A stretch of DNA of 63,829 nucleotides, filler included, from Octopus bimaculoides (taxonomy: Eukaryota): NCBI RefSeq assembly GCF_001194135.2. It is 6 parts of 6 records of this genome, joined end to end, with 100 filler letters (N's around TTAATTAATTAA, not from the genome) between each part and the next. Parts side by side here need not be neighbours in the genome. Positions count along the whole stretch, not along the records: positions 37,253 to 44,638 come from NC_068981.1; 5 more parts are not named here. One strand, 5' to 3'. A program made the position numbers and the translations under genes. This document shows, in pieces, positions 40,549-41,976 of the stretch. Numbering within the stretch: position 1 is the first letter of the stretch; every line of letters starts with the position of its first letter. The notes beneath the pieces are model-generated. The model worked only from the letters and a program-made list of their open reading frames with translations, did no database searches and was not told the origin of the DNA.

Positions 40549-41501
40549 CTCGGTCGACGAATATGAGTCCAGTTAACAAACCGATACATGTAATCCATAA
40601 CTGGCGAAACGGAAGATATAATCCATTGGTTTGATTTACCACAATCCATATATGGTTGTGTAAAATAAACCGGAAGTGGAATATTTCCTGCTGTCTGACC
40701 AGGTTGACTTGGTCCAAAGAATGAATCAACATTGTATTCCTTAGTACTAAACGCTCCTGTATAATTGGAATATTTAAAACCAATATTGTAAGAGAATTTA
40801 GTAAGAGAATCCATACTACTCGAGGTATCAGGAAGTTTATAAACATTGTACCAAGGTGTTGTCTTTGAGGAAGGGTCAGTATAATTGTGATTACTTGCAC
40901 CAAAATCTTTGATCATTACTGTTTGTAAGGTCATCTCTCGAAGATAATTATCTGAATCTCTTGAATCATCCCATCGCCAGGCAGACGGACCAAATAAAGG
41001 CAATGTTGTATTAAATTTGTACGGGTCCAACCAATTGGGATAAGAACAGTTATAGTCATAAAATAAACTACTGCCGTTCAGACTAAATGGATTAGCATTG
41101 ACATCAGCAACTGCTGACATATACATATACATCCAACCTGGCAAATTGGGAAAATCATTCTTAGATTCATTGAATTTTTGTAGCATGTAACTATAGAAAT
41201 AGGCTCTGTTTAATGCCATATTATGAAGATGCAAGAGTTTCGTGCGATTTTTATACATGATCTTGCTCAAAAGTTCGTTGTATTTTGGCAGCTGAGATAC
41301 AACGTCTGCTCTCACAGTTAACTGGTCTCTCGATTTGCCTCTGCAATTCTGCGGCGTGACTGCCGTAATTTTGTCCTGTATTTCGTCGTAGTGATCATAT
41401 TTCATCCATTCAAATTCTCCAGAAGTGTATGTTGTATACAAGAATACAACAAACAGACAAGCTAGATGAAAGCTCACAGTACTGATTAACGTTTTCGCCA
41501 T
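40549..41501 (-). CDS. Coding exon: signal peptide plus extracellular Cache-like domain resembling GPR158/GPR179-type ectodomains (uncharacterised secreted or membrane protein, partial)
   Basis: Stop-free frame. Acceptor TTTTCAG at 41538, ATG at 41501 in CAAGATGG context, donor AG/GTAAGA at 40548 (phase 2). Hydrophobic N-terminus MAKTLISTVSFHLACLFVVFLYTTYTSG, 8 N-x-S/T sequons, motifs LHNMALNRAYFYSY and FTQPYMDCGKSNQWIISSVSP. Confidence 0.88.
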
Positions 41502-41976
41502 CTTGAATGTCACATGAAGATATCTATTGCCATTTGCCTGAAAATATTAAGTAACTCATCAATTTCTCATTAAAACAGAAATGTTCAGTGAATATATTTC
41601 TATATATGAAAAGTAAAAATTGATATTTGATTAATAGGAAATATACAGGTAGAAGCAAAAAAAATCTTATGCCAAATGGAACAAACATACGTTAGATTAT
41701 GTTTTTGCTTTCTTTTTTACTACCTTTGCATGTTTTAAGTGACCAAAATTCACATTTACACTCAATATATATAGTATTGCGTAAAATTATTCATTTATAT
41801 AAAATATATCATTGCCATTGATGTAGGTAAATCCGTTTAAAAATGTCAAAAACAATAAAATATATAAAAATACGCATACACACACACTACTAAATACAGG
41901 CACGCACACACACTGCTAAATAAAAGCACACACATACATACATACATACATACTCACATACTACTAAAATGTTGTT

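What the first reader, a model, noticed from the sequence alone, without database searches (positions are those of the whole stretch)
40549..41537. Orphan receptor-like or secreted protein with a GPR158/179-type Cache ectodomain
Seen in the sequence: a clean 317-codon reading frame in a TE desert, with signal peptide, 8 sequons, conserved-looking blocks and FTQPYMDCGKSNQWIISSVSPV. Known: class C orphan GPCRs GPR158/GPR179 have Cache ectodomains with a similar W/F-x-x-PY-x-DC...W strand, and GPR158 has been reported to bind glycine there. Inference: this is an uncharacterised invertebrate small-molecule-sensing ectodomain, which may or may not be attached to a 7TM domain. It is a candidate for an unstudied chemosensory or neuromodulatory family.
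Basis: partly seen in the sequence, partly recalled or inferred. Interest (0 to 1): 0.7.

Follow-up and report, generated by a model that had tools for sequence, protein, structure and literature searches.

The report
First exon of receptor-less GPR158-like protein
The reading frame is real and is the first coding exon of an unstudied invertebrate surface protein built from two copies of the glycine-receptor (GPR158/GPR179) sensor ectodomain but, in its full-length relatives, lacking the seven-helix receptor part.

Summary
On the minus strand, an ATG at 41501 opens 317 codons plus 2 bases. They end at 40549 in a canonical AG|GTAAGA splice donor. The frame has an N-terminal hydrophobic leader, 8 sequons and the motif FTQPYMDCGKSNQWIISSVSPV. 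It is an exon, not a whole protein; the next exon lies beyond the piece's edge.

The GPR158/179 assignment holds at sequence level:
- Longer orthologues hit Pfam GPR158_179_EC (E about 1e-19).
- Full-length orthologues hit human GPR158 (E 5e-19) and GPR179 (E 1e-16) in the PDB.

Full-length relatives come from scallop, snails, octopus, flukes, Macrostomum, shrimp and tardigrade, and are 800-1000 aa. They share one architecture:
- a signal peptide;
- two tandem [Cache + EGF-like] modules;
- no 7TM in any of 301 proteins fetched;
- a short C-terminal hydrophobic tail that looks like a GPI signal;
- in molluscs and parasitic flatworms, a furin-type site just before module 2.

Scallop transcripts confirm this reading frame. 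The window exon encodes most of module 1. Profile comparison shows module 1 is a diverged duplicate of the Cache-bearing module 2.

Structure prediction was mediocre and gave only weak support for a Cache fold. I found no paper on the family. Function, whether ligand sensing or matrix binding, is inferred and not shown.

The parts
40549..41501 (-). Coding part of exon 1: 317 codons plus 2 bases (phase-2 boundary). It encodes the signal peptide and most of the first Cache-type domain (module 1).
   Evidence: ORF and sequence. 46 homologues down to E 1e-148. The exon keeps 81 of 85 columns that are at least 90% conserved in the family.
41502..41537 (-). Probable 5' untranslated start of the exon. 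It follows an acceptor-like TTTTCAG|G (41538-41544) and holds a 7-codon uORF, MAIDIFM* (41533-41510).
   Evidence: Sequence only. No transcript evidence for this species.
41418..41501 (-). Predicted signal peptide, MAKTLISTVSFHLACLFVVFLYTTYTSG.
   Evidence: Kyte-Doolittle 19-mer mean of 1.4-2.0 over aa 1-27. It is the only hydrophobic segment in the exon. Homologues all start with a similar leader.
41175..41237 (-). The family's most conserved helix, LLHLHNMALNRAYFYSYMLQK. It is the counterpart of the ALRLAHFLSxFLQN helix of module 2.
   Evidence: Invariant H91 H93 N94 A96 L97 N98 R99 A100 S104 Q108. Long helix in both AF2 models. Aligned to the module-2 helix by hhalign.
40599..40664 (-). FTQPYMDCGKSNQWIISSVSPV. 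This is the start of the region homologous to Pfam GPR158_179_EC and to GPR158 'WSPPYLECENGSYKPGWLVT'. C287 (40641-40643) and C53 (41343-41345) are the exon's two invariant cysteines.
   Evidence: PF22572 starts at the equivalent residues in P0007, P0021 and P0041. HMMER alignments to 7ewl and 7she. Invariant C53 and C287. GPR179's Cache domain has one disulfide (PMC11437087).
40543..40548 (-). Splice donor GTAAGA. The in-frame stop TAA (40545-40547) lies inside it.
   Evidence: Sequence. The intron position after RRxR is shared by most homologues: database ORFs end there and longer models continue with F/I-VG-V.
37253..40542 (-). First part of intron 1. No further coding exon of the gene lies here.
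   Evidence: tblastn with the C-terminal parts of three longer orthologues finds nothing here. In the closest relative, exon 2 lies 4 kb downstream of exon 1, which is further than the 3.3 kb left in the piece.
41977..42340 (-). tRNA-derived SINE-like repeat, copy A, upstream of the exon. It is context, not part of the gene product.
   Evidence: 93-96% identical to copy B. tRNA-like head with B box on the reverse complement.
43171..43549 (-). tRNA-derived SINE-like repeat, copy B.

Best explanation
SHOWN. Window 40549-41501 (minus strand) is the first coding exon of a gene in an unnamed family that is widespread in protostomes. Databases call its members 'uncharacterized protein' or 'GPR158/179 extracellular domain-containing protein'.

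Full-length members are 800-1000 aa and read as follows:
- signal peptide;
- module 1 (a diverged Cache-type domain plus an EGF-like Cys-rich domain);
- a variable linker;
- module 2 (a more canonical Cache domain plus an EGF-like domain);
- a run of small residues, then a 14-20-residue hydrophobic C-terminus.

There is no seven-helix domain and no cytoplasmic region. The window exon supplies the leader and about 290 residues of module 1, up to a conserved phase-2 intron in the last part of the Cache domain. The remaining exons lie outside the piece.

INFERRED, architecture.
- The C-terminal tail is a GPI-attachment signal, so the protein sits on the outer face of the cell membrane.
- In molluscs, flukes and a cestode, an R-x-K/R-R site 54-67 residues before the first helix of module 2 is cut by a furin-type convertase.
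- Cleavage would leave module 1, the part encoded here, as a heavily N-glycosylated subunit held to GPI-anchored module 2. Alternatively module 1 is shed.

INFERRED, mechanism. My preferred reading, at roughly 35-40%, is this. GPR158 and GPR179 ectodomains work as Cache-Cache homodimers. The tandem duplicate forms a single-chain pseudo-dimer of the same kind and acts as a receptor-less binding module. It captures a small ligand in a Cache pocket and/or binds a matrix or proteoglycan partner on its outer loops. It signals only through a membrane partner, or acts as a trap. This is comparable to other 7TM-less Cache proteins (alpha2delta, CACHD1) and GPI-linked co-receptors (GFRalpha).
For: Exon status: AG|GTAAGA donor with the stop inside it. 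The intron position is conserved across homologues.

Family and domain:
- 46 homologues, E 1e-148 to 1e-34.
- PF22572 at E 5e-15 to 6e-19 in P0007, P0021 and P0041.
- 258 representatives found with the exon profile.
- Two PF22572 hits plus PF22673 (Cache), and no PF00003, in nine of the ten long proteins scanned; the tenth, P0048, is a truncated model with one hit.
- Human GPR158 at E 1e-10 and 5e-19, GPR179 at 7e-6 and 1e-16.
- Module 1 versus module 2: hhalign 99.9%, E 1e-33 over 310 columns. Exon profile versus module-2 N-part alone: 96.6%, E 6e-10.

No 7TM:
- Only N- and C-terminal hydrophobic segments in the full-length proteins.
- 0 of 301 family proteins have 3 or more hydrophobic 19-mers.
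- Two independent scallop RNA-seq contigs (3010 and 2927 nt) carry the uninterrupted 820-aa CDS with flanking untranslated sequence.

Tail and furin-like site.

Same gene layout in the closest relative (66% identical). Exons 1, 2 and 3, the module-2 exon and the next exon lie on one strand of one contig.

The window copy looks functional. It keeps 81 of 85 strongly conserved columns and 6 of 8 conserved sequons.

Bona fide 7TM GPR158-type receptors exist separately in a gastropod (2 in Lymnaea, PMC11589774). This family is therefore a paralogue, not the receptor itself.
Against: - Nothing beyond exon 1 of THIS gene can be seen, because the piece ends 3.3 kb into the intron. The two-module, 7TM-less architecture is transferred from relatives that are at most 68% identical.
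- The exon alone has no significant Pfam or PDB sequence hit.
- AF2 models are mediocre (pLDDT 65 and 69.6, pTM 0.60). Foldseek does not retrieve GPR158 or GPR179. It retrieves only the bacterial Cache sensor 3lic at E 0.018 and TM 0.22/0.32.
- The GPI anchor, furin cleavage, pseudo-dimer and any ligand are inferred from sequence patterns only. No predictor or experiment supports them.
- The furin-like site is absent in shrimp and tardigrade and displaced in Macrostomum.
- No expression data were available for any member beyond the existence of transcripts.
Confidence: 0.75

Rival explanations
1. The exon is the start of a genuine class C GPCR of the GPR158/GPR179 (mGlyR, Drosophila Smog) type. 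The 7TM exons lie further downstream, outside the piece.
For: The ectodomain type is that of GPR158/179. The rest of the gene is not visible in the piece. Several database entries of the family are even named 'G-protein coupled receptor 158/179'.
Against: - No member of the exon's own family has a 7TM. Ten long proteins scanned give no PF00003 hit.
- 0 of 301 have 3 or more hydrophobic segments.
- Scallop transcripts end after the tail.
- The closest relative's contig continues into module 2, not a 7TM.
- The 'GPCR' names are automatic and sit on proteins of 470-953 aa without helices.
- Molluscs have separate 7TM GPR158 genes.
Confidence: 0.06
2. This is the same protein family, but the function is adhesive or organisational rather than small-molecule sensing. 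The tandem ectodomains would bind matrix or proteoglycan partners, as GPR179 binds pikachurin and GPR158 binds heparan-sulfate proteoglycans. They would position other proteins at cell contacts or synapses.
For: The known partners of the GPR179 ectodomain are matrix proteins contacted by outer loops of the Cache domain, and glycine does not act on GPR179 (PMC11437087). The family is heavily and conservatively N-glycosylated and is predicted to be membrane-tethered. Module 1 is too diverged for its pocket to be aligned with the mGlyR pocket.
Against: No partner is known. The strong conservation of many buried-looking aromatic and polar motifs in module 1 fits a pocket as well as an interface. 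Nothing tested here discriminates between the two readings.
Confidence: 0.3
3. This is a lone or decaying exon copy. It would be a pseudogene fragment left by duplication in a repeat-rich region and is not part of an expressed gene.
For: Downstream exons cannot be seen. The family is tandemly duplicated in some molluscs (Candidula, Gigantopelta, Bulinus). SINE-like repeats flank the exon.
Against: - The frame is intact over 317 codons in 36% G+C DNA (chance about 4e-11).
- Start context, leader and donor are all intact.
- 81 of 85 strongly conserved columns are kept, with only conservative changes at the other four.
- The expected distance to exon 2 in the closest relative (4 kb) exceeds what the piece holds.
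Confidence: 0.07
4. This is a complete single-exon gene for a secreted protein of about 318 aa that ends at the TAA.
For: The frame has a start, a leader and a stop. Many database entries are of this length.
Against: - Those entries are prokaryote-style ORF calls on eukaryotic contigs.
- The stop is inside a consensus donor at a conserved intron site.
- The domain would be cut within the PF22572 region, whose remainder is encoded by exons 2-3 in relatives.
Confidence: 0.03

Closest known systems
GPR158 (mGlyR) and GPR179, vertebrate class C orphan GPCRs; Drosophila Smog is a 7TM homologue
   Same: Both share the ectodomain type, a Cache domain with one conserved disulfide followed by an EGF-like Cys-rich domain. 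The similarity to human GPR158 and GPR179 chains is significant (E 5e-19 and 1e-16 with the family profile) and is covered by Pfam PF22572. The W/F-x-x-P-Y/F-x-D/E-C ...
   Different: This family has no 7TM domain and no cytoplasmic RGS7-binding tail. It has two ectodomain modules in tandem instead of one, and a C-terminal GPI-signal-like tail. Module 1, encoded in the window, is so diverged that its N-terminal 270 residues match GPR158/179 only indirectly, through module 2. Its Cys-rich domains have 6 invariant cysteines, against 10 in GPR179.
Bacterial and archaeal Cache/PDC sensor domains (Pfam MCP-like_PDC_1, PF22673; for example the Shewanella histidine-kinase sensor 3lic)
   Same: Module 2 of the family passes the PF22673 cut-off (36.9 bits against 27). 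3lic is the only non-GPR158/179 PDB sequence hit (E 0.004 and 0.02). It is also the top Foldseek hit of the module-1 model (probability 0.98).
   Different: This is a eukaryotic, glycosylated, disulfide-bonded domain fused to EGF-like domains. The similarity is marginal and the model TM-scores are low.
alpha2delta calcium-channel subunits and CACHD1 (animal Cache proteins without a 7TM)
   Same: This is a functional analogy only, from established knowledge. These are extracellular Cache-bearing proteins that are membrane-tethered without signalling domains of their own. alpha2delta is cleaved into two chains and reported to be GPI-anchored, and these proteins act through partner membrane proteins.
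   Different: No VWA, VWA_N or VGCC_alpha2 domains were detected in this family. The Cache subtype is different, so it is not a member.

Membership tests
GPR158/GPR179 class C GPCRs | Cache-type extracellular domain of the GPR158/179 kind (Pfam PF22572 region, conserved Cache disulfide) | tested here: met
   PF22572 at E 5e-15 to 6e-19 in orthologues, starting in the exon's tail. GPR158 and GPR179 PDB hits. Invariant C53 and C287. The exon on its own falls below Pfam thresholds.
GPR158/GPR179 class C GPCRs | EGF-like cysteine-rich domain directly after the Cache domain | tested here: met
   Present in orthologues (exons 2-3). In the window itself it lies beyond the piece's edge.
GPR158/GPR179 class C GPCRs | Seven-transmembrane class C domain (PF00003) | tested here: not met
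   No PF00003 hit in 10 long orthologues. Only terminal hydrophobic segments are present. 0 of 301 family proteins have 3 or more hydrophobic 19-mers. Scallop transcripts stop after the tail.
GPR158/GPR179 class C GPCRs | Cytoplasmic C-terminal region that recruits RGS7-Gbeta5 | tested here: not met
   Full-length orthologues end 0-5 residues after the C-terminal hydrophobic stretch.
Unnamed protostome tandem GPR158/179-ectodomain family | Module-1 signature: leader, then F-x-W, NC, HLHNMALNRAFFYSY, PLFGPxAWRxDD, NYT, FFGP, FTxPYxDCGxSNxW, RRxR followed by the intron | tested here: met
   All invariant columns are kept, along with 81 of 85 columns that are at least 90% conserved. The donor is at the conserved position.
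Unnamed protostome tandem GPR158/179-ectodomain family | Second Cache + EGF module and C-terminal hydrophobic (GPI-signal-like) tail in the same gene | not testable with these tools
   These lie outside the piece. They are present in the closest relative's contig (module 2) and in all complete orthologues.
Cache/PDC fold superfamily | Long N-terminal helices followed by a PDC alpha/beta sandwich, judged by structure comparison | tested here: inconclusive
   AF2 pLDDT 65 and 69.6. The secondary-structure order (3 helices, about 6 strands) is compatible. The only Foldseek hit with high probability is the Cache sensor 3lic, but at E 0.018 and TM 0.22/0.32. GPR158/179 were not retrieved.
alpha2delta / CACHD1 | VWA_N, VWA and VGCC_alpha2 domains around the Cache domains | tested here: not met
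   None of these Pfam families appears in the scans of the exon or of 15 orthologues.

The most novel reading that the evidence does not exclude
The family is a single-chain, GPI-tethered pseudo-dimer of the mGlyR-type sensor. An ancient tandem duplication would have fixed the Cache-Cache dimer of GPR158/179 in one polypeptide. Furin then cuts this into a shed or associated module 1 and an anchored module 2. The protein would work as a receptor-less amino-acid or metabolite sensor or ligand trap, tuning the 7TM GPR158-type receptor or another partner across protostomes. This would be a new class of co-receptor for metabotropic glycine-type signalling, lost in vertebrates and seemingly in insects and nematodes.
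Probability: 0.15. Interest if true: 0.8.

Novelty: new variant of a known kind. Interest (0 to 1): 0.52.

Why it matters
GPR158 was recently recast as a metabotropic glycine receptor, and GPR179 is needed for night vision. Their Cache + EGF ectodomain has been regarded as a hallmark of that receptor pair.

This finding leads to a conserved family in molluscs, flatworms, nemerteans, priapulids, nematomorphs, tardigrades, crustaceans and ticks. The family uses the same ectodomain twice and has no receptor body at all. I could find no publication on it.

If it binds a ligand or a matrix partner, it would show how this sensor works when uncoupled from a GPCR. It would also provide soluble, naturally receptor-free versions of the domain for ligand and structure work. 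It may mark an unrecognised co-receptor or decoy layer in invertebrate signalling.

There is a practical point too. Gene models often split the gene in two or label it 'GPCR 158/179', and exon-1 ORFs contaminate metagenome protein sets as 'hypothetical proteins'.

Tried and rejected
1. Pfam and PDB sequence searches with the exon alone, and PDB with the 41-sequence exon profile, gave nothing significant. The link to GPR158/179 needs the longer orthologues.
2. AF2 on exon 1 alone (pLDDT 65) followed by Foldseek against the PDB gave only noise. The domain is truncated by the exon boundary.
3. AF2 on the complete module 1 of the oyster orthologue (pLDDT 69.6) gave one weak Cache hit and no GPR158/179.
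4. The search for downstream exons in 37253-40547 found none.
5. I took the oyster and Candidula gene models (405 and 412 aa) at first as evidence for a short secreted protein. I rejected this. The oyster model reads through a GTAAGT donor, and the 'next gene' is module 2 of the same protein.
6. The attempt to align the mGlyR glycine-pocket residues to module 1 or 2 failed. HMMER aligns only GPR158 residues about 238-361, and the Science paper on mGlyR is not in the held library. Pocket conservation is therefore untested.
7. The last homology search, with module 2, was meant to pull in 7TM GPR158 orthologues of molluscs. It returned only this family. Separate 7TM genes are supported only by the Lymnaea genome paper.
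8. tRNA and Rfam scans of the piece found nothing.
9. Literature searches for the family found no paper.
10. Species identification failed. The exon is 52-56% identical to gastropod and bivalve orthologues alike and 66-68% identical to two unnamed contigs. The source is probably a mollusc, but it cannot be named.
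Full report
**1. What is in the sequence**

The piece (37253-44638) is AT-rich (about 36% G+C) and carries one long reading frame, on the minus strand.
- It starts at the ATG at 41501, in the context CAAGATGG. It runs for 317 codons plus two bases to 40549.
- There the sequence reads AG|GTAAGA. The in-frame TAA is part of this consensus splice donor.
- The translation begins with a hydrophobic leader (aa 1-27), which is the only hydrophobic segment.
- It has eight N-x-S/T sequons, four cysteines and the quoted motif FTQPYMDCGKSNQWIISSVSPV at aa 280-301.
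- A stop-free run of this length has a chance probability of about 4e-11 in DNA of this composition.

This is an exon rather than a whole protein. The surroundings are also not free of repeats (section 8).

**2. Relatives and the exon boundary**

The exon's translation finds 46 proteins (E 1e-148 to 1e-34, 38-68% identity). They come from Aplysia, Candidula, Bulinus, Saccostrea, Batillaria, the fluke Paragonimus and many unnamed contigs.

Most of these entries are 310-340 aa and stop at the same ...RRxR. They are bacterial-style ORF calls on eukaryotic DNA that end at the same intron. The longer models continue with xVGVxVMDxDFxxxDFNxC... and a cysteine-rich stretch.
- In the oyster locus these are two small exons 0.3 and 1.1 kb further on.
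- In the closest relative (66% identity, ENA contig ctg94058l) they lie 4.0 and 7.9 kb downstream of exon 1.
- tblastn finds no such exon in the 3.3 kb that the piece holds downstream of the donor. The rest of the gene is cut off by the piece's edge.

The window copy keeps every invariant column and 81 of 85 columns that are at least 90% conserved. The four changes are conservative. Six of its eight sequons are conserved in at least 36 of 40 homologues. It looks like a working copy.

**3. Is it a GPR158/179-type Cache ectodomain?**

The exon alone gives no significant Pfam or PDB sequence hit, even as a 41-sequence profile. The assignment rests on three links.
- **Pfam.** Orthologues that include exons 2-3 hit PF22572 (GPR158/179 extracellular domain) at E 5e-15 to 6e-19. 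The match begins at the residues equivalent to the exon's LPVxFTxPYxDC.
- **Solved structures.** The full-length scallop orthologue hits human GPR158 (7ewl/7she, E 1e-10) and GPR179 (8d1b/8irj, E 7e-6). A profile of 11 full-length members hits them at E 5e-19 and 1e-16.
- **Internal duplication.** The remaining 270 residues of the exon are homologous to the second module of the same proteins. hhalign gives 99.9%, E 1e-33 over 310 columns. With the shared PF22572 part removed it still gives 96.6%, E 6e-10. That second module passes the Pfam Cache model PF22673 (up to 36.9 bits against a cut-off of 27). It also weakly matches the bacterial Cache sensor 3lic.

- AF2 gave pLDDT 65 for the exon and 69.6 for the whole oyster module 1.
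- For the second it found a single confident hit, again the Cache sensor 3lic (probability 0.98, E 0.018, TM 0.22/0.32). It found no GPR158/179.
- The predicted order of three helices and about six strands is what the GPR179 paper describes for its Cache domain (PMC11437087).

I count the fold as compatible but not demonstrated. The homology is demonstrated.

**4. What the whole protein looks like**

An exhaustive profile search with the exon alignment found 258 representatives, among them proteins of 650-1010 aa. Their names place them in these groups:
- scallops (Argopecten, Pecten; 820 aa);
- snails (Biomphalaria, 982 aa; also Pomacea, Haliotis, Littorina, Gigantopelta, Plakobranchus);
- octopuses (884 aa);
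- schistosomes (953 aa), other flukes and a cestode;
- Macrostomum (911 aa);
- a nemertean, a nematomorph, a priapulid and a tardigrade;
- decapods (805 aa), a copepod and a tick.

All are 'uncharacterized', 'GPR158/179 extracellular domain-containing protein', or carry automatic 'GPCR 158/179' or 'Fras1-related' labels.

Ten long representatives were scanned. Nine have two PF22572 hits, one at about aa 280-385 and one near the C-terminus. The tenth, P0048, is a truncated 726-aa model and has only the first. None hits 7tm_3.

Hydropathy shows only the leader and a final 14-20-residue hydrophobic stretch. That stretch is preceded by small residues and followed by 0-5 residues, for example ...KCRIGGASSFRISWILVILTILYIKMFQL. 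Of 301 family proteins fetched, none has three or more hydrophobic 19-mers.

Two independent scallop RNA-seq contigs (3010 and 2927 nt) carry the uninterrupted 820-aa CDS with untranslated flanks. The 7TM-less reading frame is therefore a transcript, not a truncated gene model.

The short oyster and Candidula models that first suggested a 400-aa secreted protein are artefacts. The oyster model reads through a GTAAGT donor, and the neighbouring 'gene' is module 2. In the closest relative, exons 1-3, the large module-2 exon and the following exon lie in order on one strand of one contig.

A gastropod genome paper reports two separate GPR158-type receptors with at least 6 helices. It also mentions discarded GPCR-like predictions without transmembrane domains (PMC11589774). 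The family is thus a paralogue of the receptors, not their replacement.

**5. Further features of the family**

- In molluscs, flukes and a cestode, an R-x-K/R-R motif lies 54-67 residues before the first conserved helix of module 2: RTKR, RRKR, RKKR, RVRR, RNKR, and RHRR in the closest relative. It is absent in shrimp and tardigrade and displaced in Macrostomum.
- Each module has one invariant cysteine pair position in the Cache part (C53/C287 in the window numbering).
- Each Cys-rich part has six invariant cysteines. GPR179 has one Cache disulfide and five in its Cys-rich domain.

**6. How it most likely works**

Shown: an extracellular, N-glycosylated, two-module GPR158/179-type ectodomain protein without a signalling domain. 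The window encodes the leader and most of module 1.

Inferred from sequence patterns:
- GPI anchorage through the C-terminal signal.
- Convertase cleavage between the modules in lophotrochozoans.

Inferred by analogy: GPR158 and GPR179 ectodomains act as homodimers through the helices of the Cache domain. A tandem duplicate could therefore fold back into a single-chain pseudo-dimer. The two best-conserved helices (HLHNMALNRAFFYSY in module 1, ALRLAHFLSxFLQN in module 2) would form the interface.

Such a protein can only act by binding. It could bind a small ligand in a Cache pocket, as glycine is reported to bind in GPR158. It could instead bind matrix or proteoglycan partners on the outer loops, as pikachurin binds GPR179. 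Output would pass through a partner membrane protein, or the protein would act as a trap.

My estimates are as follows:
- About 0.75 on identity and architecture.
- About 0.35-0.4 on the 'receptor-less sensor or co-receptor' reading.
- About 0.3 on a purely adhesive or organiser reading.

Nothing I could run separates the last two readings.

**7. Comparison with known families, and novelty**

It works with the same ectodomain as GPR158/179. It fails two defining features of that family, the 7TM and the cytoplasmic RGS7-binding region, so it is not a member.

It resembles alpha2delta and CACHD1 only in logic: a Cache protein without a 7TM, tethered and acting through partners. It has none of their other domains.

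The domain is known and is auto-annotated on these proteins in UniProt. The family as such (tandem, 7TM-less, predicted GPI-anchored, widespread in protostomes) appears in no paper that I could find. I rate it a new variant of a known kind, with the window's gene an ordinary member of that unstudied family. Interest is moderate (0.52).
- Points in favour: it is timely given mGlyR, the family is well conserved, and the proposal is directly testable.
- Points against: the family is already visible in databases, and no function has been shown.

**8. Seen in passing**

- Two minus-oriented copies of a tRNA-derived SINE-like element lie upstream of the exon (41977-42340 and 43171-43549).
- A second repeat family brackets the exon (37319-37592 and 44362-44636), each copy followed by (TA)n.
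- There are long (TA)n and (TTA)n tracts and a C/A-rich skewed tract in the intron.
- A 7-codon uORF sits just before the main ATG.

Noticed in passing
window 41977-42340 and 43171-43549 (minus-strand orientation): Two copies, 93-96% identical, of a repeat of about 365-380 nt. Its reverse complement begins with a tRNA-like head (GGAGGCGCAATGACCCAGTAGTTAGGGCAGCGGAGTCACGGTCATAGGATCGCGGTTTCGATTCCCAGACC, with a B box). It is probably a tRNA-derived SINE. ARAGORN and Rfam call nothing. The copies lie 0.5-2 kb upstream of the exon, so this is not a 'TE desert'.
   Followed up: partly
window 37319-37592 and 44362-44636: A second interspersed repeat family of about 275 nt, 92% identical, in direct orientation and 7043 nt apart. 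Each copy runs into a (TA)n tract, and the two bracket the exon. They are probably independent insertions of a SINE- or MITE-like element with a microsatellite tail.
   Followed up: no
window 41510-41533 (minus strand): A seven-codon upstream ORF (ATG GCA ATA GAT ATC TTC ATG TGA, MAIDIFM*) lies between the acceptor-like TTTTCAG|G and the main ATG. It ends 9 nt before the main ATG. It matters only if the 5' UTR really starts at 41537.
   Followed up: no
window 39250-40050, 37562-37623, 38877-38932, 44069-44170: Simple sequence is found in the intron and flanks. There is a C/A-rich tract with GC skew down to -0.6, (TA)n runs of about 55-60 nt, and a (TTA)n run of about 100 nt.
   Followed up: no
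L001 (Saccostrea echinata JAVQLB010000012.1) 9998-12551 and 18352 onward; L002 (Candidula): Public gene models split this family's gene. The oyster model LOC133184968 (405 aa) is module 1 and ends by reading through a GTAAGT donor. The next annotated 'gene', 6 kb downstream, is module 2. Candidula, Bulinus, Aplysia and Gigantopelta show the same split, or tandem paralogues.
   Followed up: partly
protein databases (hits): Hundreds of 'hypothetical proteins' in metagenome and SRA-derived protein sets are bacterial-style ORF calls of single exons of this animal gene family. They end at the conserved RRxR intron. Some full-length members carry misleading automatic names such as 'G-protein coupled receptor 158/179' or 'Fras1 related extracellular matrix protein'.
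   Followed up: partly
L004 20482-21011: A reverse-transcriptase (RVT_1) ORF sits in the closest relative's gene region, downstream of the module-2 exons. The last exon of that gene was not found within the fetched 21 kb.
   Followed up: no
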